Assembly: GCF_046119375.1 (NCBI RefSeq)
Contig: NW_027362762.1
Span: 188,046,001-188,110,000, forward strand
Reading direction: 5' to 3'
Source: Phyllobates terribilis
Taxonomy: Eukaryota
Length of the DNA stretch: 64,000 bases
Positions within the stretch are counted from its first letter, which is position 1. Every line of letters begins with the position of its first letter. Position numbers and translations under genes: made by a program. Below are positions 31,301 to 55,300 of this stretch, piece by piece. Below the pieces are notes generated by a model that saw nothing but the letters and a program-made list of their open reading frames with translations, made no database searches and was not told the DNA's origin.

Positions 31301-34300
31301 TTTCCCCATAGAGATTAGGTCTATGGGGAATGCCCACATGCGGACCCGCCGGAGAAATTGACATGCTGGGGTCTGGAAAGACGTGCCACATGTTACTTTT
31401 CACGGGTGTGCCGCAGACGTATAGTGGGCATGGGATTGTATTATCCACTATGCTGTAACATCTGGGCACTGCGGACTGCACGCAGCGAACACTGATCGTG
31501 TGCACATGAATTTGTTTCTGGTTTAAAGGGAACCTGTTACCATGAAAATGCAGTCCAGTCTGCAGGCATCATGCTATAGAGCCAGGGGGAGCTGAGTAGA
31601 TTGCTACATAGTTTGTGAGAAAAGACTCCGTATTACTTGTGATTTAATAATTTAAAAGGAATCTGTCAGCTGAAACATGCTGCCCAAGATCTGAAGTCAA
31701 CGCTCTTCACAGTCGTCGACTACTGACGTCAACGCTCTTCACAGTCGTCGACTACTGACATCTCCACTCAAAGTCACCAGCTCACGTTGTGCTCAGCAAG
31801 ACCCAGCGACAGTGAATAGCAGTATCGTCTTGCTGAGCTCAGCGTGAGCCAGATTCGGGGAATGTCGTGGGAAGCGTTTATGTTTTTCAGTAGATCAGTA
31901 CACTGGAAAAAAATGGAAATCTGCATGAGGCCTAATAGTAATTCATTTTTTTATATCTGCTCAGTCATAGAACAGAAATGTAGCTAATTATACACAAAGG
32001 CCCCGATTCAGCAAAGCTTTTAAGACAGAATTCTGGCGTAAATAAACGTTGAAAATGTTGTCGCAATGCAAGGCTGTGCTAAAATTTTGTAACTTTTGGC
32101 CTCGTGCCATTTTTGACCAGCTCCAACAAAGTGAGTGGACTGGGGTAGTGGCAAGACTGCTCATCAAATTCATGACAAGCGGCATTGTCATTGTCTCCAA
32201 CTGGAGTAAGGTATGTTGGGAGGCACATGTGGAAGTGCACATCATTTTTCTGACGCGCCGGATCCATTAACCCCTTCACGACATTTGACGTATGTTTACG
32301 TCAAAGGTCATTTTCCTGCCTCAAAGTGCGAGCCCACATCTTTCCCTGCACATGATGACTTAGTCATCATGTGCCTTTTACAGTCGCGGGTGGAGAGGTG
32401 TTCGGAATGTGGCTGTTAACTAGTTAAATCCCGCTGTCAACCACTGACAGGGGGATTTAACACGCGCCGGATGGAAGTGCGTCATTTATTCCGCCCATCG
32501 GCGCCCCGGTCACATGATCACAGGGCGCTGATGGGTTGGCATGACAGCCAGGCGTCTTCGGAAGGTCCACGCGCCTGTCATTACGATACTCCTGTCATTG
32601 TGATACTCCATAGGAGATCATGATTGCTGCTATGTATAGCACAGGTGATCAGCTGCAAGTCTCCTAATGTGACTATTAAATTAAGTAAAAAGTAATAAAA
32701 AAAAGTTTTGACCCATTAAAAATGAAAATTAAACAAAAAAGAAAATGTACATATTTGGTATTGCTGCGTTCGTAAAAGTCCGATCTATCAAGATATAAAT
32801 TCATTTAATTGCTAAATTGCATTACGAGAAAAAAGAATTAAAACGCCAGAATTAAGTTTTTTGTGGCTGCGGCAGAATTGCAATAAGTGTTGATCAAAAC
32901 ATCGTATCTACCCCAAAATGCTATCAATAAAAACATCAGCTCAGGGTGCAAAAAAATAAGACCTCACACAGCCCCAGATCCAAAAAATGAAAATGTTAAA
33001 GGTCTCAGAAAATGGTGACACAATCGAAAAAAATATTCTTACAAATTTCCGATTTTATTTTCACCACTTAAATAAAAAAAACACAAACCTATACATGTTT
33101 GGTATCTACTTAGTCGTACTGACTTGGAGAATCATATGCTAGGTCAGTTTTACCATATAGTGAACATAGTAAATAAAAAACAATTGTGGAATTACACTTT
33201 TTTTTGCAATTTTAACACGCTTGGAATTTTTTTCATGCTTTACAGTGCATCACATGATAAAATAGATGGTGTCTTTCAAAAGCACAACTCGTCCCGCGAA
33301 AAACAAGCTCTCATACGGCTATGGGGACAGAAAATAAAACAGTTACGGCTTTTGGAATAAGGGGAGGAAAAAACAAAAGCGCAAAAACAAAAAATCGCCA
33401 GGTCATGAAGGGGTTAAAGGGTGTGCAGCTTTTAATGAATCAATAGTGTCTGACTCCAGTTTGATGAATCAAAGCCAAAGTAATTAAAGTAACACATCAT
33501 TTCTGTTATTATATTTCGAAATTAAGACATACATGTTATTTTATACATACGCCAATCTTAATGAGGTGTGTGCAGGAATAAGACGCACCTAATTCATTAA
33601 GAAGCGCTCTCTAGTTAATGATATAGGTGCATCTTATCACTGGGGTGCGCCTCACCAGAACTGTTACTCCAGGAACGATGCCACTTTTAAGGAGTTTGTC
33701 TGGCAGGTGTTGCCATGCCCTGTCTCACCTCAGCTCCCCTCCAGCTCTGCATTGCTGCTGAAACTGGCATGAAGCCGCCAAAAGTTGCGCAAAAATTCTG
33801 CAACATTTGAAGATGTTTTATACTAGAATTCTGGTGTAAAAGCTATGATGAAGTAATATAATAATAGGGCATCAATAAAAAGGTAGTGGCCAATCTCTTT
33901 CAGGAAAAAAAAAACTTCAAAATTATAGAGAAAAGTAGCGTTTCCTGAAGCAGATTCTGCTCAAAAAACTAGTTACACTTTTCCGCCTCCAAAAACTGAA
34001 TGTAAACCTGTCCTAAGACCGGTGTTACAATATCGCAAAGTAACTAAATTTTAGTGTCAATAATATTGCCGCAACATATGAACCATAAACTGAAACTATA
34101 ACCCAGAAAGGGGTAGTGAGTCCCAAATGGCACCAAAATAAAGCACAAGCCAATACTGATAAAGTGCAGGACAGGAAAATGTTAATCAAAGTAATAAATT
34201 AACTTTTATTGCAAAAAAAAGACAATTAAACAAAACAGTTCATAATGAAAATTGTCCCAGCACAGAGGACACAATTGACTCGTATTGGTGGGTGAACCAA

Positions 34301-43300: not shown

Positions 43301-46300
43301 TATTTAAAATAGGAGGCAGGTGAGTGACGGATCAGTGACCTGTCATTAACACAGGAGGAAGAATAAGGGACCAGAGCACCAAAAAAGACCCTGCCCCCAG
43401 GCCGCCCCGACGCACTTCACACAAAGATTACACTTGTAGGATTGCTGCTTCCAATAGGTGGCGCTATAGAGTTCAAGTCCTCTTTTATTCTGAAGAGGCA
43501 ATTTGCATATAAAGATTACACAAAAACCACAAAATGGATTTGTTCACCGCAGGTATCATTTTAATCAGTATCCCAGCTCCAATATTGCTGCGTGTACTTT
43601 AGAAAATACGTTTAAGCTACATTCCCACAATGAGTGGTAAGTTTTTTGATGCTGCAGATTTTCTATAGCATTTCTGCATCCATTAGAGTATGTTCACACA
43701 TGGCGTTTTTACAGCATTTTTTTCTGCAGCCGAAACCTTCACTCTTGGCAACATTGTGTATAAAACACAACAAGTAGCTGCATTTTATTGCTGCGTTTTT
43801 CAGGCAAATTCCATGTGCAATTTGTCTACAGTATATCAGTACTTGTTAATAAAGTTGGTTTTATTCACCAAAAACACCGCAGAAAAAAAACTCCCAAAAA
43901 AACAAAACTGTAAAAATGGAACACAAGTGTTATGCTGCTTTTTCTTGCAGCGTATTTGCATTTTCTCAATGCTTTCTATGGGTGAAAAACGCTGAAAGAA
44001 TTGACATATATTCAGTCACCAAAAACAGCCGTGTGCATGAGATTTCTATAATCTCATTTCTTTTGCTGGTACTGTAAAATGCAGCTTCTTTTCTGCAGAA
44101 AAAAACCCTGCAAAAATGCCATGTGTGAACATAGCCTTAGATAAACTAGGTTATTTGCATTTTTTATTTCATTGAGTATTTGAGTGTGTTTTTATTGCTT
44201 TTTTGACATTGTGGTTTTTGTCTCTTTTTGGTATGACGTGTTTTAAATAAAGTTGTTTTGGATTCTTCCTGGTAGTTTTTTTTTACTGCTATTTGATCAT
44301 AAAGGCCTACTTCTCGCACTCTCTTCTGGAGAATTGATGTTGAGATGTGTCTGCTACTAAATATCTGTGCATCATTGATGAGGATGGTTATATTAATTGC
44401 TGTCTGTGAGGCTGATAACTCTGAAGAACTTATTATCTGTAGCAGAAATAGTTATTGGTCTTCCTTTCCTGGGACAGGCAACATGGGAGCCAGTTTCATC
44501 ATAGTGATCGATGGTTGTTATGACTGCACTTGAGGATACCTTCAAGGTTCTAGCAACTTTCTGCACTCACTGACCTTCATGTCTTAAAGTAATAACGAAC
44601 TGCCGTTTCTCTTAGTTGAGTGATTCTTTTCATATTCTGGTTTAGAACAAATGTAGTCTAGGGCTCAGCACTGTAAAAAGCTGTGTACCGACACTGCCTC
44701 TGCAAAGCATAACTCAAACTCTCTGAAGGCCGCTCATTAAACAAATGAAGTTTACAATGGACGAGGCTTACCTGTTCATTGGAAGTCACTACAGGTGACT
44801 AACTGATGAAGCTGCTTAAGAGAATGTCAAGGGTGAGTAAAGCTGTCATCAGAATAAAAAGGGGGTACTTTGAGGAATCTAAGGTTTAACACATATTCTG
44901 GCTTGTTTCACTTGGGTATGTTTAGTCCCTGTATCCATATATATTCCTTTGTGGTTTTGCTGCTTACAGTCTGAATCTGCAATGTGCACATTCCAATAAG
45001 AATAAGGAAAACCACTGCATCAATAGGTGTCCAAACTTTTGTCCAGTACTATATTCTGTATATTTCTTATTTTTTATATATCAATATTAAAACAATATTA
45101 AATTCTTGCAAGATTAACAAAGCCTGTCCATTAAGCCTAATATTAAATTCACACTTCTTGTTCTGTAAAAATCACTTTCGGTAGTTAATTCCTTATCATC
45201 ACAGGCAGAATTACAATAACAGCTAACACAAATTTATATTGAGTAGATAACACAGGATCCACCATAGGTGATGGTCACATCAATACCCTTTGCACTAATC
45301 AGAGAAAATCTAAAAGCATCTCATGAGTCAGATCAAAGCTACTGCAGTCTATGGTTCATGTGGCTGCTGAAAAGCCAATTTCTTAATACTATTAATACAA
45401 GATCAGGCAAGATGGCGGCCTCCAAAATAATGTAAAGAAAATTCAATAAATAATCTATAACATACCACCCAACTTTTGAAGAAGAGAAAGAGGGACAGAT
45501 CATGCGGAGCACTAAGCGCGCCGCAACAAATTTTGGTCACGCCCCTGGCCACACCCCAATCCACGCCCATTTACCATTTCTTTCTCCCCTGTCAGGAGGA
45601 GTTGTCAGAAGGGCGCTGGTAATAAGGGAGATTCAGCAGACAGCCCTTATCCCCATTCCTGGCATGCATGCCCCCCTCAGACCCAATCCTGGCATGCATG
45701 GCCCCCCTCAGACTCAATCCTGGCATGCATGGCCCCCCTCAGACCCAATTCTGGCATGCATGGCCTCCTCAGACCCAATCCTGGCATGCATGGCCCCCTC
45801 AGACCCAATCCTGGCATGCATGGCCCCCTCAGACCCAATCCTGGCATGCATGGCCCCCCATCACTGCACGTATGAAAAAAATAAACACTTCTACTCACCT
45901 TCCTTCCTCCCCTCTGCTCCAGCGCTGCGTCCTGTCTGTCAGTAGCTGATCTCAGGATCTGTGCAGTGCATGACATCACTGCCATGCGCCCTCAGATGCC
46001 AAGGTGAGCTGCGGGGATATTCACTCCTCTCCACGCCGGGACTATGGATGTGGAGAGGAGTGAACAGTCATTCTCCTTAATAGCTCCCACTGTCAGCACG
46101 GCCGCATCTCCTGCTGTGGCTCAGCGATCTTCTGTGCCCACTACTAAAGAGAATGAATATTCACTCCTCTCCATGTCCATGGGAGTGGAGAAGAGTGAAT
46201 ATTCATTGTCTCTAATAGAGGGCACACAAGATCGCGGAGCTGCAGCAGGAAGCCGGCGGCTGCGACTGACAGTGTGCGCTATTAAGGAGAATGAATATTC

Positions 46301-49300
46301 ACTCCTCTACACTCCCATGGGCGTGGAGAGGAGTGAATATCCCCGCAGCTCACCTCGGCATCACGTGGTAGCTGCAGCAGCCCGCTACTACCTGTGCTAG
46401 CTGCCCCACCACCCTACACAGCCGGGAGAACAACTGAGCCGTGAGGGGACGCGGGACAGTCCAGCGGAAACCGGGACGGTTGAGAGCTAGGTCTATAAGC
46501 ATAAAATAAAAACATATTACAAAGAAATATGCGTCACGATCTGGTTTTAAATAAAATACTATTGGTGATTCAATCCTTCTAAAAAAAATTGTCACAGACA
46601 CCTTTTCCAAATGAAGTTAGTGTAGTGAGCTGCTGATCCTCCTGGATATTGGCTTCCCTCACAGCAATCAGCTATTATTAATAAAGGAAACCAGGTTGAG
46701 GAATGCCTTTCTTCTACTAGGGGCATATAGTATAGTTGTCTTCCTAAAATAACTTCTTTACATTGGCTATACCCAAGAAGAAAGTTGGCCAAACCTGACG
46801 ATTTTGATGACCTCGGCCAACAGTCGATATGTCACAGGTCAGATCATGCATCTGGACATACCACATTCAACCCTTGAGGTGTTTCGCAGCATCCTTCTGG
46901 ATATTTTTGTGAACATCCTGTCACTAATCCCATTCAAGAAGACAGTCTTCTTCTTAGTCAAATATAGCAGCTCCCATGTAACAAAGGATAAAATATTTAG
47001 GCCGGGATCATATTACCATATAACACGGCCGAGTGTTATCGGATGTTTTATCGGATAGCACTTGGCCCAATATTGTTCTATGAGGCAGTGCAGATCAGCG
47101 ATTATTTTCTCATGTCGATTCGGCATGATAGAACAATCGCTGCATGCTGCGATGGCCAGCGAGACTCGGCTCGCTCGCACACATACAAGTCTATGGGTGC
47201 GTGTGAAACATCGGACGTCATCCCAGTGCAGTCTGATATACGCCGAGACCGGCAATGGAGGAGGAGGAGAAATTACTTTCTCAGTCTCCTCCACACCTGC
47301 TGTGCTTTGATTCTCTCATGCGAAAGGATCGCAGTACAGTAGAATGACACTCGGCTGACGCTGGCAGCAGAGCTGGAGCTGAGCGTCATTAGCATATCAC
47401 ATCCGGTGCTCTCACATCGGATGCCATACACTACTGTGATTCCAGCCTTAGAGGGAACCTATTGCTTGTGAGAAAAACAAAAAAAGTGACACAAGATGAT
47501 ATTATGAGTCTTTTCTCAAATACTTATCATTAACAAATCAGATGATTTCTATTGGTTTACAGGGAAGCAGGTTTCTCTTTAATTAAACTAAAGTGAATCC
47601 AAAATCTGGTGAAATTCTCTTCTCTGGGAGGAGCCAATTGTGAAGGGGTATCTAATTATATACAGTATCTTAACCCCTTCCCGACCCATGTCACACCGTT
47701 TGTGACATGGAAAACAGTTCGTTCCCGACCCATGTCACAGCGTCTGTGACATGGAGGGATAGCGCCCCTGCAGCGCCTGCGAGCGGGGTCGCTCAGGTGT
47801 CACAGTTGCTACTGCAACTAGACAACCTGTAGTTGACCCCACAGGGGGTGGATTAACCCCCCCGTGCCTAAAACCCCTCCGATTGGCAGTTTCACTTTCA
47901 CTTTTAGTGAAACTGCCAATCGGAATGAATGAAATATTTCACCAATGGAAATTGGTGAAATATTTACTTTCTGGGCATGGCATGATGCTTATAGCATCAG
48001 CCATTGGCTGGGGGGAGTGTCACCTCTGTGTCACCCCCCCCAGATCTGATTGGGGGGCTAGCATCACATGGACACTAGCTCCAATCAGATGTCGAGCGGT
48101 GTATTTACTATGGCTGACCAAACTTTCCAGATCCATCCCTTCCGTGGAGCCAGAGGAGTTTGGTCACGCCGATCCGCTGCTGCCACAGATCATCTGCCCC
48201 GCCGCCGATCGTCTGCCACCTCCATCGCCGCCACCGATCCTCTGCACCCGCCGCTGCCACCGCTGCATATCTGCCGCCGATCCCCTGCACCCGCCGCTGC
48301 CTCCGCTGCTGATCCGCTGCCGGTAGTATCCCCCCCTTATCAGATTTCCAGCCCCCACTCCCCCCCCAACCCCCCCCTCCACCCCCCTTCCACCCCAGTC
48401 CCAATTTCTCACCTGTACCCCGACCTCCGCTCCCTCCCTCTCCCACGTCTTCATCCACCGGCTGCTGCTCTCCTTCTGACAGCCGGTGGACTGTGATCAC
48501 AGGCAGCAGCAGACTCAGTGTAAATCTCCTGCGCCTGTGATCACACCACCATCCCCCAGTCCCAGGGATCACACCATCATCCCCCAGTCCTAGTGATCTC
48601 ACCCACCATCCCCCAGTCCTAGTGATCTCACCCCCCCCAGTGATCACCAGCCCCCTCCCCCGTCCGAGTGATCACCCCCCCTGCTGCTGCCAGCTACTGC
48701 CTGCCGGCCCCTACCCCCCTTGCTGCTGCCGGCTCCTGCCCCCCTTTCTGCCCCTTCTGCCCCAGTGATACCCCCCCTGCTGCTGCTGCTGGCTCTTCCA
48801 TCTCCTCAGCCCCCTCCTGCGCCCCATCGCGCCCCCTCCTGCGCCCCGTGCACATGAGCGCGCCCCCTCCTGCGCCCTGTGCGCCTGAGCGCGCCCCCTC
48901 CTGCGCACCGTGCGCCTGAGCGCGCCCCCTCCTGCGCCCCGTGCGCCTGAGCGCGCCCCGTACGCCTGAGCGTGCCCCCTCCTGCGCCCCGTACGCCTGA
49001 GCGCGCCCCGTACGCCTGACCGCGCCCCCTCCTGCGCCCCGTGCGCCTCCACACGTGATTTACACCAAGCACTCACACATACACACGTACACTCACACTA
49101 ATAATAAAGTTTAGATTTTTTTTTTTTACCCACAGCACACAAAATGTCCCGCCCGTCCCGCCCTAGGGCGTACTCAGCTGAGGAGGCATATTCCTTTATT
49201 GCCTCCGAAGCTGATAGTGAGGGAGAGGACCCCACGTTCCTCTATTCCTCTCATTCTTCCTCCTCCAGTGACACCGAGCCGGCACCAAGACGACGTCAGA

Positions 49301-52300
49301 GGTCAAGGCATCGTCCGGAGGCCGTGGAAGAAGACCCACAGCCATCTGTAAGTAACCCTCAACCTGGTGCTAGTCACGCCCAACCTAGCACCAGTGCCCC
49401 CGTGTGGACCCCCGTCCCTGAAAATTACGCTCCACGGATTCCTGATTTCCTTCCCCAATCAGGAATCCAGTTTGAGACAGCAAACCTCAGTGAAATAGAC
49501 TTTTTCAAAGTCTATTTCTCTGAGGCCATTGTCAGTCTCATGGTGGAGCAGACTAACATTTACGCCCAACAATTTTTGTCTGCAAACCCAAATTCAATGT
49601 TTTCTACTTGGAGTCCCGTTGACTCAGTAGAAATGTTGAAATATTGGGGACTGGTACTTCACATGGGGATTGTGAAGAAACCAGAAATCCGTCAATACTG
49701 GAGTACCGATATTTTATATCAAACTCCAGTGTTCGGAATGGTGATGACCCGCAAAAGATTTGAGGTCATTCACAAATTTTTACATTTCAGGGATAACGCG
49801 GACAGCCTTCCCCGTGATGACCCGAATTTTGACAGACTGTTCAAAATTCGTCCGGTCATAGAACACTTCAGCAATAAGTTTGCTGAAGTGTACGTTCCCC
49901 AAAGGGAAATTTCTGTGGATGAATCCCTCATCCACTTCAAAGGGAGGCTTCAATTCCGACAATACCTGCCCAGTAAGAGGGCCAGGTACGGAATAAAGCT
50001 CTACAAGCTGTGCGAGAGTGCCTCAGGGTACACTCACAGCTTTAGAGTTTACGAAGGAAAGGATTCGAGGATTCAGCCCCCAGAATGTCCACCTGCTCTG
50101 AAGGTAAGTGGGAAAATAGTGTGGGATTTGATCCGCCCACTGCTTGATAAAGGTTACCATCTATACGTTGATAACTTTTATACAAGCATTCCCCTATTTC
50201 AGTCCCTCTCTGCCAGAGCTACCGCCGCTTGCGGTACTGTGCGCAGAACCCAGAGGGGTCTCCCTTTGACGCTAATTGAGCAGCTTCTCCCAAAGGGTGA
50301 TAGCCGAGCTCAATGTAGCGGCAACATGGTTGTGGTGAAGTACAAAGACAAAAGGGACGTCTTTTTCTTGACCACAATCCATGGTCCCGGCATCACGGCC
50401 ACCAACGTTAGAGGTACCCCAGCACCGGTCCGCAAACCGGACTGTGCCCTGGAGTACAACAAGCACATGGGGGGAGTTGATCTTTCTGATCAAGTCCTCC
50501 AGCCCTACAGTGCGATGAGGAAGGCGAAAGTCTGGTATAAAAAACTGGCCGTGCACATCGTTCAAATGGCACTGTATAACGCATACGTGCTGTCATGATG
50601 TGCAGGCCAGACCACCAACACCTTCCTCAACTTCCAGGAGGCGGTGATAAAGGCCCTGATTTTTAGAAGCGAAGAAGAAGCGGGCCCCAGCACCCCTGGA
50701 ACTCGAGTCTCCCGTGTGGTACCAGGGCAACATTTTCCTGGTGAGGTCACGGTAAGAAAAAGGTGCCGGGTCTGCCACAAAAGGGGGATAAGAAAGGTCA
50801 CCCGTTTCCAATGTGAAACGTGTCCTGATAAACCGGGACTGTGTTTGAATGAATGCTACAAAATTCATCACATGTCCCCGGACTAAACACATCCTGACCT
50901 TCCCTACAGAACTCACCCACACTAGCATGACATGCGAAACATCACACACACACACACAACAACCTCACGTACACTACAACACAACACCAACCTATGTCAG
51001 GTTGGTGTGTGTGTTGTAGTGTATGTGAGGTTGTTTGTGTGTGTGTGTGTGGTGTATACACCACACCACACACCAAACTCACATACACTACATCTAGATA
51101 AGTTCCCTGGGGGGTCTAGTTTCCAAAATGGGGTCACTTGTGGGGGAGCTCCAATGTTTAGACACACAGAGGCTCTACAAACGCAACATGGTTCCAATTT
51201 GTTAGCGGACACCATGTCGTGTTTGGAGAGGTCCTGTGTGCCTAAACATTGGAGCTCCCCCACAACTGACCCCATTTTGGAAACTAGACCCCTCAAGGCA
51301 CCTATCTAGATGCATAGTGAGCACTTGGAACCCCCAAGTGCTTCACAAATTGATTTGTAAAAATGAAAAAGTATTTTTTTTCCACTTTTCATTTTTACGA
51401 ATCAATTTGTGAAGCACCTGGGGGTTCCAACTGTTCACTATGCATCTAGATAGGTGCCTTGGGGGGTCTAGTTTCCAAAATGGGGTCACTTGTGGGGGAG
51501 CTCCAATGTTTAGGCACACAGGACCTCTCCAAAAGCATCATGGTGTCCGCTAACAATTTGAGCCGAAATTGTTAGCGGACACCATGTTGCGTTTGGAGAG
51601 GTCCTGTGTGCCTAAACATTGGAGCTCCACCACAAGTGACCCCATTTTGGAAACTAGACCCCCCAAGGCACCTATCTAGATGCATAGTGAGCACTTGGAA
51701 CCCCCAAGTGCTTCACAAATTGATTCGTAAAAATGAAAAAGTGGAAAAAAAAATACTTTTTCATTTTTACGGATTAATTTATGAAGCACCTGGGGGTTCC
51801 AAGTGCTCACTATGCATCTAGGTAGGTGCCTTGGGGGGTCTAGTTTCCAAAATGGGGTCACTTGTGGTGGAGCTCCAATGTTTAGGCACACAGGACCTCT
51901 CCAAACGCAACATGGTGTCCGCTAACAATTTCGGCTCAAATTGTTAGCGGACACCATGATGCGTTTGGAGAGGTCCTGTGTGCCTAAACATTGGAGCTAC
52001 CCCACAAGTGACCCCATTTTGGAAACTAGACCCCCAAAGGCACCTATCTAGATGCATAGTGAGCACTTGGAACCCCCAAGTGCTTCACAAATTGATCTGT
52101 GAAAACGAAAAAGTACTTTTTTTTTTACAAAAATTTTCTTTTAGCCTAAATTTTTTAATTTTCACATAGGTAACAGGATAAAATGCATCCTAAAATTTGT
52201 TGGGCAATTTCTCCTGAGTACACCGACACCTAATATGTGGTCAGAAACCACTGGTTGGGCGCATGGCAGGGCTCAGACTGGAAGGAGCGCAATTTGACTT

Positions 52301-55300
52301 TTGGAGCTAATTTTCCAATCAAAAAGTGAAATGGCGCTCCTTCCCTTCTGAGCCCTGTCGTGCGCCCAAACAGTGGTTTATGACCACATATGAGGTATTG
52401 GTGTACTCAGGGGAAATTGCCCAACAAATTTTAGGATGCTTTTTACCCTGTTACCCATGTGAAAATTAAAAAATTTAGGCTAGAAAAAAAATTTTGTTAG
52501 AAAAATTAAAATGTTCATTTTTTTCTTCAATGTTGCTTTAGTTCCTGTGATGCACCTGAAGGGTTAATAATCTTCATGAATGTAGTTTTGAGTAGCTTGA
52601 GGGGTGCAGTTTTTGGAATGGTGTCACTTTTGGGTGTTTTCTGTCATGTACACCCCTCAAAGGGACTTCAAATGTGATGTGGTCACTAAAAAAAATGGTT
52701 TTGCAAATTTTGCTGGAAAAAAGAAAATTTGCTGATGAACTTTGAACCCTTCTAACTTCCTATCAAAAATTATTTTTTTTCCAAAATTGTGCTGATGTAA
52801 AGTAGACATGTGGGAAATGTTATTTATTAACTATTTTGTGTCACATCACTCTCTAGTTTAGCAGAATAAAAATTAAAAATTTGAAAATTGAGAAATTTTC
52901 AAAATTTTTCCCATATTTTTGATTTTTTCACAAATAAACGCAAATATTATCGACCTAAATTTAATACTAACATGAAGCCCAATATGTCACGAAAAAACAA
53001 TCTCAGAATCGCTAGGATCCGTTGAAGTGTTCCAGAGTTTTTACTTCGTAAAGGGACACTGGTCAGAATTGACAAAAATGCCAAGGTCTTTAGGGTCAAA
53101 ATAGGCTGGGTCCTGAAGGGGTTAAAGAGGTTTTCCACTACTAGGACAACCCTTCTTAAACTAAATGTTCGATCGTGATAAAATAAAAAAACCTATACTC
53201 ACCTCCCGTAATGGCTCCGTTCCAGCGGGGTCAGCACTCGCAGTCCTGGGCTGTGCTGCGGTGGAATGACACCTGGTGCCAATCAGCGCTGGCATCACTG
53301 TCTCCGCCTTTGACAAACTGAACACGAAGAGGAAGTCCAGGATCAGCTGCAGCTGGACATTCAGTTTAAGGAGAGGTTGTCCCAGTAGTGGACAACCCCT
53401 TTAATGATAAATGGAGCATTATTCTCAGATTTTACTTGTATTGGATTGTTTCTTCAAGTCACTGGTCATAAAAGCAAAATACAAACATGTGAAATTCACC
53501 AATGCATCCCGATGAGATGCGAATCAGCAAAGCATATTTAAGTGAAAATTTTCCTCATCTCTTGCCAGGAGTGAAAATTTTACTTTGTACAAAATACTGT
53601 TATTACAGGCAGGGCTGCCACTAGGTATTTCGGGGCCCCCTTGATACTCTGCCCAGGCTCCACCCCAGCTCCACCTCCTACCCTTGAACCTTCAACAGTC
53701 TCACTGCCCACGCTTGGAAAAACTCCACTTCATCAGCACCACGTCATCAGCCTCCCCTCCCTCATCAGCGTCCCCTCAGCAGCCTCCCCTCCCTCATCAG
53801 CATCCCCTCCCTCATCAGCCTCCCCTCCCTCATCAGTGTCCCCTCCCTCATCAGCGTCCCCTCCCTCAGCAGCCTCCCCTCCCTCATCAGCCTCCCCTAA
53901 GCAGCGCAGAGCAACACACAAACACAAACTTCCTTACTTGACCTCCCGCTGCTGTCCCTGCAACACATATGGCACGCTGCTGCTCTGATCCGGATTGAAG
54001 ATGAGCGCGCAGTGTGTCACATGACCGACGTCAGGACCATGATGCACCCGACCACGGATTAAAGGTACAGCGCTAATTTCTGCCCGACGGGTGCATCATG
54101 CGCCGAACTGTTGTCCCTAAGAGGCCCGGTAAGCAGAAGCTAAAAGAGGGGGGCCCCGGTTCGTGGGCTTGGGGCCCAGGCTGGCCGGCCCCCCCCTTTT
54201 TGCTTCTGGTCACTGGGCCCCATACAGCAGTAAGGGCAGTAATTCCCTGATGGGGGCCCTGATTACGGGTGCATTATGCAGCCCAGATAAATGGGGATAT
54301 AGTCACTTCTCGAAAATGACCTTTTTTAAATCAGGTTTTTGTGTTACCTGTATTTCTATTTAAATGTAGGGCGATACTTTTTAAAAAATATATATATTGC
54401 AATCTTTATTAAAATACAAAATTAGTAAACTTGTAATTTTCACATTGGCCACTGGGGCTTTTTTCGACTCATACTTCCTGTCCTTTCAGGAACAGTTTTC
54501 AGGAGGCTCCTTATCATTAGAGGCATGATTGCAAAGACAGGAAACACTTCTTTACACAGCTGATAATAATGATAATATAGAATCCACCAATCAAATAGGC
54601 AATGTCAGAGCTGACCCCTCCCTTCATAATGACCTCTGTAAAGGCTCAATAGATCATTATGTACTTTAATACAAAAGATAGGGTCAGAGTCTTTTAATTG
54701 TGGTTATACAGATGTGTTATTTTCTGAAACAACAGGGAGACAGAGTCTAAAAAAAGTGGCCAGTGTGAAAATTGCAAGATTATTTTTTTTTTATTTTAAT
54801 ACAGATTGTGATATGGATTTTTTTTTTTGTAAAATATAAAAATATAAACAATTTTAACATAAGAACCTGATTTAAAGAGCTTCCGTGTAAAAATTACTTT
54901 TCAAGAGGAGGGCATAGCTGCTTCTATAGGGTTAATCTGCAAAAAGAGGACATGTTTGCTTCTAAAGGGTTAATCTACTAGGAAAGGAAATAGCTGCTTG
55001 TAACAGGTTATTCTTCTATGGAGAGATATAACTGCTTCTCATGGTGATCTCACAAAAATGTCAACATAGTAAAACAGTGGAGAACTCAACTTTAGCATCC
55101 CTAATTTTAAAATGCCAAAGCTTTTACTACTCAATTAATTGAGACATTTTTTTACTTTTACTAATAATTCATATATCAGAAGAAGGTATATTTTAGCCTC
55201 CTTTGGTTCTCTTTAAGGAAACCAGCAACAGATATTTAACTACTTGTAGACTGCACATAGACTTTAACGGTCACACCTTCAGTTTTTGGTGAGTTTTTTA

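What the first reader, a model, noticed from the sequence alone, without database searches (positions are those of the whole stretch)
51091..52115. Flip/flop fold-back palindrome array inside the piggyBac
Six monomers of about 185 bp alternate in orientation, so every junction is a hairpin axis. Equivalent loops are reverse complements, not direct copies: GAGCCG (51560-65) versus CGGCTC (51932-37), and ATTTTTTTTCC (about 51372) versus GGAAAAAAAAAT (about 51743). Arm variants also mirror about the 51748 axis (GCATCATGG/CCATGATGC; CTCCACCAC/GTGGTGGAG). Simple tandem duplication would keep loop orientation, so the array grew by inverted fold-back copying or repeated arm-to-arm inversion, reminiscent of flip/flop isomers of hairpin-replicating genomes. 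A further inverted repeat of about 370 bp follows (about 52128-52500). Nearly 1.5 kb of the element could extrude cruciforms or make dsRNA. The repeat itself may already be in frog repeat libraries; the mechanism is my inference.
Basis: partly seen in the sequence, partly recalled or inferred. Interest (0 to 1): 0.7.

Follow-up and report, generated by a model that had tools for sequence, protein, structure and literature searches.

The report
Hairpin-unit repeat with flipped loops
A dead piggyBac jumping gene in a frog genome carries a real 1-kb run of DNA blocks that alternate in direction and have flipped hairpin tips, most likely an ordinary tandem repeat of a hairpin-shaped 372-bp unit reshuffled by known exchange between its arms.

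Summary
Positions 51086-52123 hold five full monomers of 186-187 bp and one truncated, older monomer, strictly alternating in orientation. The array lies in the 3' non-coding part of a complete TTAA-flanked piggyBac (47674-53121). Equivalent loops are exact reverse complements: L1b versus L1c match 36/36 with flanks, and L2a versus L2b match 45/47.

The arms do not support pure mirror copying.
- Five variants are shared between monomers, against 0.57 expected by chance, and they do not fit one tree.
- Variants near L1 are mirrored, while those near L2 are direct or fit neither scheme.
- Undoing two small loop-centred exchanges makes all four non-CpG sites fit one head-to-tail 372-bp duplication.

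Best reading (0.55): a tandem repeat of a palindromic unit, followed by loop flips through arm-to-arm template switching or recombination. This process is already documented elsewhere. Mirror or snap-back copying remains possible (0.3). Nothing ties the array to piggyBac's end hairpins or to virus-like hairpin replication.

No other copy of the repeat could be fetched. The scan has noted similar hairpin-unit arrays on other DNA of this genome (s1-204926, s1-211423), with the same verdict. Ordinary and low interest, though a tidy natural record of loop inversion.

The parts
47670..47688 (+). Left TTAA target duplication (47670-73) and left terminal inverted repeat of the piggyBac (from 47674)
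   Evidence: Read directly; pattern search finds both ends, with 0.19 matches expected by chance
49144..50886 (+). piggyBac transposase gene of 580 codons, broken by one in-frame TGA at 50596-98; no frameshift
   Evidence: Pfam DDE_Tnp_1_7 E 1.5e-84 and zf-Tnp_2 E 1.2e-10; in-frame stop; best relative is Ranitomeya imitator at 82%
50936..51092 (.). CA-rich segment built of three short units in alternating orientation (about 50939-50992 +, 51000-51055 -, 51056-51092 +). It joins M1 at a shared CACTA(C)A
   Evidence: Inverted and direct repeats; junction read
51086..51194 (-). Monomer M1: truncated (109 bp) and 11-14% diverged from M2-M6. The junction L1a (51193-51210) carries a deletion of about 19 nt relative to L1c
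51195..51372 (+). Monomer M2
51373..51383 (.). Loop L2a, ATTTTTTTTCC (T orientation)
51384..51559 (-). Monomer M3
51560..51565 (.). Loop L1b, GAGCCG
51566..51742 (+). Monomer M4 (no private substitution; equals the consensus except col 65)
51743..51754 (.). Loop L2b, GGAAAAAAAAAT, the reverse complement of L2a. It is the centre of the 357-nt-arm palindrome and of the inferred small exchange tract (at least 51725-51772, at most 51708-51789)
   Evidence: tract limits (inference)
51755..51931 (-). Monomer M5
51932..51937 (.). Loop L1c, CGGCTC, the reverse complement of L1b. It is the centre of the inferred exchange tract (at least 51868-52001, at most 51791-52078)
   Evidence: 36/36 with flanks; tract limits (inference)
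51938..52114 (+). Monomer M6, the last copy, abutting the T-run that begins the next hairpin (L2c 52115-52126, T orientation)
52119..52505 (.). Second, unrelated hairpin: arms 52119-52305 and 52319-52505, 187 nt, 89% complementary, 13-nt spacer
52542..52652 (+). Diverged paralogue of the monomer (in '-' monomer orientation) in the element's 3' subterminal region. It carries GCACCTG, the col-143 state of M3 and M5
   Evidence: Ungapped identity 57/111 against 27.8 +/- 4.6 at random offsets, maximum 46; local alignment z = 5.5
53107..53125 (-). Right terminal inverted repeat (ends at 53121) and right TTAA (53122-25)

Best explanation
The array is a short head-to-tail tandem repeat (period 372 bp, 2.5 units) of a hairpin-shaped unit made of two inverted 186-bp halves. 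It sits in the 3' untranslated part of a now dead piggyBac copy.

Because every unit is a palindrome, any arm can pair or align with a neighbouring arm in the inverted register. The short loops are the only heterology. At least two loop-centred exchanges then turned loops L1c and L2b over, together with the innermost arm segments. One tract is 134-288 bp around L1c and the other 48-82 bp around L2b. The exchanges could have been interstrand template switching at a replication fork, inversion by crossover between arms, or a gene-conversion tract in the inverted register.

Shown: the anatomy, the exact loop reversal, the non-tree-like sharing of arm variants, and the switch from mirror to direct relationship along the monomer. 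Inferred: the order of events, the tract limits and the molecular route. No function is implied. The array is most likely a neutral by-product that makes the transcript and the DNA strongly self-complementary.
For: - TRF finds a 372-bp period x 2.5 at 92%.
- Col 143 is A in all three '+' monomers and G in both '-' monomers. G is also the state of the distant paralogue at 52552-58. One mutation in a unit that was then copied head-to-tail explains this.
- Five variants are shared by two monomers, against 0.57 expected by chance under a star tree (P(>=4) = 0.0016). Their sets {3,6}, {4,5}, {3,5}, {5,6}, {2,6} are mutually incompatible, so exchange between monomers occurred.
- The dimers M3-M4 and M5-M6 are mirror-related near L1 (3 against 7 differences, cols 2-100) but not near L2 (12 against 10). 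Undoing the two loop-centred exchanges gives direct 11 against mirror 19, and turns the four non-CpG shared sites into {3,5}, {4,6}, {3,5}, {4,6}.
- The edge monomer M1 is truncated and 11-14% diverged, as is usual for the edges of arrays homogenised by exchange (established knowledge).
- Loop or spacer inversion of inverted repeats by template switching is documented, is reversible and is favoured by long arms (PMC8604942; PMC8794818). Spacer inversions by arm recombination are known in large palindromes (PMC3723533).
- Tandem arrays arising from hairpin-forming MITE sequence are known in frogs (Xstir, reviewed in PMC12628747).
Against: - The reconstruction rests on only four informative sites plus the loops.
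- In event counts it is no more parsimonious than a mirror duplication with two or three homoplasies.
- It needs two flips among five loops. All three or four loop comparisons then alternate by chance, which has probability about 1/8 to 1/16 if orientation is random.
- The L2b tract has to be short (82 bp or less).
- No second copy of the array and no reads could be examined.
Confidence: 0.55

Rival explanations
1. Mirror (fold-back or snap-back) copying. The array grew by inverted duplications. A 3' end or nascent strand folded back on an existing hairpin or short inverted repeat and copied the neighbouring monomers in reverse. Every junction therefore became a symmetry axis and the loops alternate by construction. 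Later gene conversion blurred the arm pattern.
For: - Every testable pair of equivalent loops is reversed.
- The array is palindromic about L1b over 367 aligned columns (94.3% mirror against 91.8% direct) and about L2b over 357 nt (95.8% against 94.1%).
- Col 23 and col 65 are mirrored about 51748.
- The end of the monomer plus the following T-run forms a short palindrome (AAAAAGTACTTTTT at 52108-52121) that could prime a fold-back.
- Fold-back inverted duplications at breaks and forks are well documented (PMC7467729, PMC11724301, PMC3907307).
- The whole 3' region (50936-52505) is made of inverted pairs.
Against: - Col 143 and col 161 contradict a mirror relationship about 51748 or about 51562 and would need parallel changes or extra conversions.
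- A mirror duplication about L2b does not explain why L2b is an exact reverse copy of L2a.
- A single snap-back about L1b predicts M6 = rc(M1), yet M1 is truncated and 13% diverged.
- Excess mirror identity comes almost wholly from the loops: arm differences are 15 (mirror) against 17 (direct).
Confidence: 0.3
2. Assembly artefact: a chimeric fold-back read or a mis-join of dispersed copies created the alternating structure.
For: Palindromes are a known trouble spot for assemblers (general knowledge).
Against: - Fold-back chimeras give near-identical arms. Here the monomers differ at 3-7% of sites, with 15 private substitutions, a 1-nt length difference between the loops, and an older truncated edge copy.
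- The array sits in a coherent element with both ends, TTAA duplications and a nearly intact gene.
- Scan notes report similar arrays at other loci of the genome (unchecked).
Confidence: 0.04
3. Selected hairpin cassette: the palindromic 3' UTR is kept because it makes a long hairpin RNA that feeds small-RNA silencing or regulates the transposase. Loop orientation would be irrelevant.
For: - Extreme self-complementarity (z = -62).
- The array lies between the stop codon (50886) and the only AATAAA signals (52865, 52933), so it would be in the transcript's 3' UTR (inference).
Against: - No expression or small-RNA data could be obtained.
- No Rfam family matches.
- The arms decay freely: there are 15 private changes and no compensatory pattern.
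- The copy is dead.
Confidence: 0.06

Closest known systems
Tandem arrays that grow out of hairpin-forming transposon sequence (Xenopus Xstir/MITE arrays, Drosophila virilis Tetris, coral CMITE arrays; PMC12628747, PMC2872659)
   Same: A transposon-internal sequence with inverted halves is amplified head-to-tail inside or beside the element, and the host is a frog as for Xstir. Here the period is 372 bp.
   Different: There are only 2.5 units, and the loops of successive units are reversed. I did not find this described for those arrays in the texts I read. Copy-number variation among loci was not tested here.
Spacer or loop inversion of inverted repeats by interstrand template switching (Ripley-type; PMC8604942, PMC8794818, PMC5453318)
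   Same: The spacer is replaced by its exact reverse complement while the arms stay put. The event is reversible, is favoured by long arms, and can carry adjacent arm variants across.
   Different: Documented cases have arms of about 7-20 bp and spacers of 2-8 nt. Here the arms are 186 bp, the spacers are 6-12 nt and the inferred tracts are 48-288 bp. That overlaps the size of ordinary gene-conversion tracts, so the two routes cannot be told apart.
Flip/flop termini and head-to-head concatemers of rolling-hairpin replicons (parvoviruses)
   Same: Formally the same symmetry: both orientations of an asymmetric loop occur, and every junction is an axis.
   Different: There are no terminal hairpins of a linear replicon and no nickase gene. 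The array is internal and chromosomal, and the arm variants are not mirrored throughout.
Fold-back inverted duplication and ODIRA inverted triplication (PMC7467729, PMC4689423, PMC10766183)
   Same: Copies alternate in orientation and are joined at short inverted repeats. A short palindrome exists at the monomer/T-run junction.
   Different: As I derive the ODIRA model, the two junctions of one type keep one orientation, whereas here they alternate. Those events involve kilobases to megabases, against 186-bp units here.
Arm-to-arm gene conversion and spacer inversion in large sex-chromosome palindromes (PMC3723533, PMC8327919)
   Same: Exchange between inverted arms homogenises them and occasionally inverts the spacer.
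   Different: The scale is 10-1000 times larger, and those are single palindromes, not a tandem series of them.

Membership tests
piggyBac superfamily transposon (the host element) | TTAA target-site duplication on both sides | tested here: met
   TTAA at 47670-73 and 53122-25
piggyBac superfamily transposon (the host element) | Short terminal inverted repeats starting CCC... | tested here: met
   CCCCTTCCCGACCCA against CCCCTTCAGGACCCA. There are 4 matches to the pattern in the window where 0.19 are expected, and two of them are these ends
piggyBac superfamily transposon (the host element) | DDE_Tnp_1_7 transposase with a C-terminal cysteine-rich zinc finger | tested here: met
   PF13843 E 1.5e-84 and PF13842 E 1.2e-10
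piggyBac superfamily transposon (the host element) | Uninterrupted transposase reading frame (autonomous copy) | tested here: not met
   One in-frame TGA at 50596-98
Head-to-tail tandem repeat of a palindromic unit (transposon-derived, Xstir/Tetris kind) | Constant head-to-tail period | tested here: met
   TRF gives period 372, 2.5 copies, 92% match and 0% indels
Head-to-tail tandem repeat of a palindromic unit (transposon-derived, Xstir/Tetris kind) | Unit composed of two inverted halves | tested here: met
   Arms of 186-187 nt at 94-95% with 6-16 nt spacers
Head-to-tail tandem repeat of a palindromic unit (transposon-derived, Xstir/Tetris kind) | Equivalent positions of successive units are direct copies | tested here: inconclusive
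   Met at col 143 (all '+' copies A, all '-' copies G). Not met at the loops or at cols 23 and 65. Met at all four non-CpG sites once two loop-centred exchanges are undone
Head-to-tail tandem repeat of a palindromic unit (transposon-derived, Xstir/Tetris kind) | Unit derived from the transposon's own sequence | tested here: inconclusive
   There is a diverged paralogue in the 3' subterminal region: 57/111 ungapped identity against 27.8 +/- 4.6. The direction of derivation is unknown
Head-to-tail tandem repeat of a palindromic unit (transposon-derived, Xstir/Tetris kind) | Unit number varies between loci | not testable with these tools
   No other copy is in the window. Frog genome DNA was not retrievable, and the metagenome scan found 0 matches. 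Only unchecked scan notes report arrays of 2.7 kb and 13 kb
Rolling-hairpin replicon with flip/flop termini | Hairpins at the ends of a linear replicon | tested here: not met
   The array is internal, 200 bp after the stop codon and 998 bp from the right end
Rolling-hairpin replicon with flip/flop termini | Replication-initiator nickase gene | tested here: not met
   The two ORF pieces scanned against Pfam (49144-50598 and 50644-50886) are the transposase. No other ORF longer than 179 aa lies in the element, and the monomer ORF has no homologue
Rolling-hairpin replicon with flip/flop termini | Both loop orientations present, with arms mirrored about every junction | tested here: inconclusive
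   Loops are reversed, but col 143 and col 161 are not mirrored
ODIRA-type inverted triplication | Exactly three copies with the middle one inverted, and junction loops of one type in one orientation | tested here: not met
   There are five to six copies, and L2 alternates T/A/T. The expected loop pattern is my derivation from the model in PMC4689423 and PMC10766183
Foldback (FB-type) transposon | Long terminal inverted repeats built of subrepeats at both ends | tested here: not met
   The ends are short repeats of about 15 nt. The array is on one side only and internal

The most novel reading that the evidence does not exclude
This array, and the similar arrays that scan notes report in other transposons of this genome, are fossils of repeated snap-back (hairpin-primed) DNA synthesis during repair of breaks inside transposons. 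That would be a cellular, rolling-hairpin-like route that builds strictly alternating palindrome arrays in a vertebrate germ line, with later conversion blurring the arms.
Probability: 0.2. Interest if true: 0.6.

Novelty: new member of a known kind. Interest (0 to 1): 0.25.

Why it matters
If the favoured reading holds, the locus is an ordinary transposon-borne tandem repeat. Its modest value is as a clean natural record, in a vertebrate, of loop inversion together with swapped inner arm variants in 186-bp inverted repeats. That lies between the short-repeat template switches known from yeast and bacteria and the spacer inversions of large sex-chromosome palindromes.

A genome-wide census of loop orientation in the longer sister arrays could measure how often such flips occur relative to point mutation. 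It would also settle mirror copying against tandem growth. The array says nothing new about piggyBac transposition.

Tried and rejected
- **Other copies in the window:** BLAST of the monomer and of the whole element against the window found none. A second element with the same end type (32267-33417) shares no internal module.
- **Copies in other frogs:** contigs encoding the two closest transposases (Ranitomeya) came back without DNA because the files are too large.
- **Metagenome contigs:** an exact 23-nt core of the monomer gave 0 hits. I did not use the second scan because the invariant core had already failed.
- **Monomer ORFs:** exact look-up of two ORFs that cross the array, and a word search with the 71-aa ORF, found nothing.
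- **Reads:** I did not try to get the same thing another way.
- **Rfam:** no family matches in 47000-54000.
- **MITE self-insertion, rejected:** no junction carries TTAA.
- **744-bp super-unit repeated head-to-tail, rejected:** M2 and M6 (11 differences) and M1 and M5 are no closer than other pairs.
- **Single snap-back about L1b, rejected:** it predicts M6 = rc(M1).
- **ODIRA, rejected:** it predicts non-alternating loops.
- **L1a as an extra loop comparison:** after its deletion of about 19 nt, only 3-4 nt remain. They slightly favour the L1c orientation, which is too weak to count.
Full report
**What is there**

The self-comparison of 50500-53000 gives inverted pairs of 186-187 nt at 94-95% separated by 6-16 nt. 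It also gives one pair of 357-nt arms at 96% centred on 51748, and direct families spaced 370-372 bp. Tandem Repeats Finder reports one array, 51194-52115, with period 372, 2.5 copies, 92% match and no indels.

Aligning the six pieces in one orientation shows five full monomers: M2 51195-51372 (+), M3 51384-51559 (-), M4 51566-51742 (+), M5 51755-51931 (-) and M6 51938-52114 (+). There is also a truncated M1 (51086-51194, -). M2-M6 differ from one another at 5-12 of 174 sites. M1 differs from each of them at 12-15 of 107 sites. No other copy lies in the 64-kb window.

**The loops**

With 15 nt of flank on either side, the reverse complement of L1b (GAGCCG, 51560-65) equals L1c (CGGCTC, 51932-37) at 36 of 36 positions. 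The reverse complement of L2b (51743-54) equals L2a (51373-83) apart from one T in the run and one T in the stem. Four of the six loop bases differ between L1b and L1c read directly, so this is a reversal and not point mutation.

The last junction, L2c (52115-26), is T-rich like L2a and runs into the first bases of the next hairpin. L2 therefore reads T, A, T along the array. L1a has lost about 19 nt and is nearly uninformative.

The array is thus symmetric about each junction: 94.3% mirror against 91.8% direct about L1b, and 95.8% against 94.1% about L2b. The single strand folds at -465.7 kcal/mol, with z = -62 against shuffles.

**Context**

The array lies inside a complete piggyBac.
- TTAA sits at 47670-73 and 53122-25, with terminal repeats CCCCTTCCCGACCCA and CCCCTTCAGGACCCA.
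- The transposase gene spans 49144-50886, with Pfam DDE_Tnp_1_7 (E 1.5e-84) and the zinc finger zf-Tnp_2.
- The gene is broken by one in-frame TGA at 50596-98, not by a frameshift.
- The closest protein is from the dendrobatid frog Ranitomeya imitator at 82%. Other hyloid frogs are at 53-68%.

The array starts 200 bp after the stop codon and ends 998 bp before the right end. The only AATAAA signals of the 3' region are at 52865 and 52933. The array would therefore lie in the 3' UTR, which is an inference.

The whole stretch 50936-52505 is built of inverted pairs:
- three short CA-rich units;
- the six monomers;
- an unrelated hairpin with 187-nt arms at 89% (52119-52505).

M1 joins the CA-rich part at a shared CACTA(C)A. 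A diverged paralogue of the monomer lies in the 3' subterminal region (52542-52652). Its ungapped identity is 57/111 against 27.8 +/- 4.6 at random offsets.

**How the array arose: what the arms say**

Among M2-M6 there are 15 private substitutions and five sites where two monomers share a minority state:
- col 23 {M3, M6};
- col 65 {M4, M5};
- col 143 {M3, M5};
- col 161 {M5, M6};
- col 162 {M2, M6}, a CpG site.

Under a star tree with the same number of events, 0.57 such sites are expected, and P(4 or more) is 0.0016. Most of the sites therefore reflect shared history. Their sets cannot fit one tree, so sequence was exchanged between monomers.

The pattern depends on position. Over cols 2-100 (the L1 side), the dimers M3-M4 and M5-M6 differ at 3 sites in mirror register and 7 in direct register. 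Over cols 101-175 (the L2 side) the figures are 12 and 10.

Col 143 is A in all '+' copies and G in all '-' copies. G is also the state of the subterminal paralogue. One mutation in one arm of a unit that was then copied head-to-tail explains this. Mirror copying would need parallel changes.

Suppose one swaps back the inner segments of M5 and M6 around L1c (at least 51868-52001, at most 51791-52078). Suppose one also swaps back the inner segments of M4 and M5 around L2b (at least 51725-51772, at most 51708-51789). The four non-CpG sites then become {3,5}, {4,6}, {3,5}, {4,6}, and the dimers differ at 11 sites direct against 19 mirror. These are exactly the two loops whose orientation needs explaining.

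The coherent history is therefore a head-to-tail duplication of a 372-bp palindromic unit, followed by two loop-centred exchanges. M1 is truncated and three to four times more diverged. It behaves like the edge of an array that is otherwise homogenised by exchange (established knowledge of tandem arrays).

**Mechanism of the flips (inferred)**

In an array of palindromic units, each arm can align with its neighbours in the inverted register. The loop is the only heterology. Three known processes give the observed result:
- interstrand template switching at a fork, which inverts spacers, is reversible and is favoured by long arms (PMC8604942; loop inversions in PMC8794818);
- a crossover between the two arms of one hairpin, as in the spacer inversions of large palindromes (PMC3723533);
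- a gene-conversion tract in the inverted register.

The sequence cannot separate them.

**The rival, mirror copying**

Fold-back or snap-back synthesis explains the alternation of all loops without appeal to chance. Under random flipping the chance of the observed alternation is about 1/8 to 1/16. A short palindrome (AAAAAGTACTTTTT) at the monomer/T-run junction could prime a fold-back. Fold-back duplications are well documented (PMC7467729, PMC11724301, PMC3907307).

Three points count against it:
- Col 143 and col 161 contradict a mirror relationship.
- A mirror event about L2b does not explain why L2b is an exact reverse copy of L2a.
- A single snap-back about L1b predicts M6 = rc(M1), which is not seen.

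In raw event counts the two histories are about equal, and only four sites carry the argument. I put tandem-plus-flips at 0.55 and mirror copying at 0.3.

**What is not supported**

piggyBac's hairpin intermediates are 4-nt TTAA hairpins at the transposon tips (PMC7351741). The array is 1 kb inside the element. The element has no nickase gene, and the monomer ORFs have no relatives. An ODIRA-type triplication would keep same-type loops in one orientation (my derivation from PMC4689423 and PMC10766183). No Rfam family matches.

An assembly artefact is unlikely, because fold-back chimeras have near-identical arms whereas these carry 3-7% differences and an older edge copy. I did not seek the same information by another tool.

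**Earlier notes of this scan (unchecked leads)**

I had already written down my reading when a look-up showed that another piece of this genome carries a 2.7-kb array of a 382-bp hairpin unit inside a cut-and-paste transposon. Its 'flipped' loops were attributed by another agent to two later inversions (s1-204926). A 19-kb piggyBac with a 13-kb array of a 383-bp hairpin unit was judged head-to-tail (s1-211423).

If these are the same repeat family, unit number varies among copies, and the growth mode is tandem. I could not read those loci, so this agrees with my result but does not add independent weight.

**Verdict**

This is a real feature and an ordinary kind of thing: a transposon-borne tandem repeat of a hairpin unit. 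Its loops have been turned over by known arm-to-arm exchange. It belongs to a known kind, and interest is low to moderate (0.25).

Noticed in passing
window 45995-46362: A 368-bp nested palindrome just outside the piggyBac. Its outer arms are 43 nt at 98%, with three inner a/a' hairpins and an inverted 56-nt segment pair. It looks like a fold-back MITE. The inner loops are themselves near-palindromic (CCCATGGG), so their orientation is uninformative.
   Followed up: partly
window 45650-45860: About seven tandem copies of a unit of about 30 nt (CCTGGCATGCATGGCCCCCCTCAGACCCAAT) immediately upstream of that palindrome.
   Followed up: no
window 48100-49070: The 5' non-coding part of the piggyBac is GC- and C-rich low-complexity sequence with tandem units of about 30 nt (CGCCCCCTCCTGCGCCCCGTGCGCCTGAG-like). 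It gives long spurious proline- and arginine-rich ORFs on both strands.
   Followed up: no
window 32267-33417: A 1.15-kb non-coding element with the same end type (TTAACCCCTTCA..GAC on both ends, TTAA-flanked). It is a piggyBac-type MITE with no internal similarity to the element studied here.
   Followed up: partly
window 53122-53405: A hairpin-type MITE of about 280 bp, with ends AGAGGTTTTCCACTACTAGGACAACCC and GGTTGTCCCAGTAGTGGACAACCCCTTTAA, abuts the right TTAA of the piggyBac. The two elements therefore share that TTAA.
   Followed up: no
window 50596-50598: The transposase gene is interrupted only by a single in-frame TGA, and the rest of the 580-codon frame is open. This copy is less decayed than the ORF list (two ORFs) suggests.
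   Followed up: yes
window 51566-51742: Monomer M4 has no private substitution, while its neighbours carry 3-5 each. This may be chance (a few per cent). It may also be because M4 took part in both inferred exchanges.
   Followed up: partly
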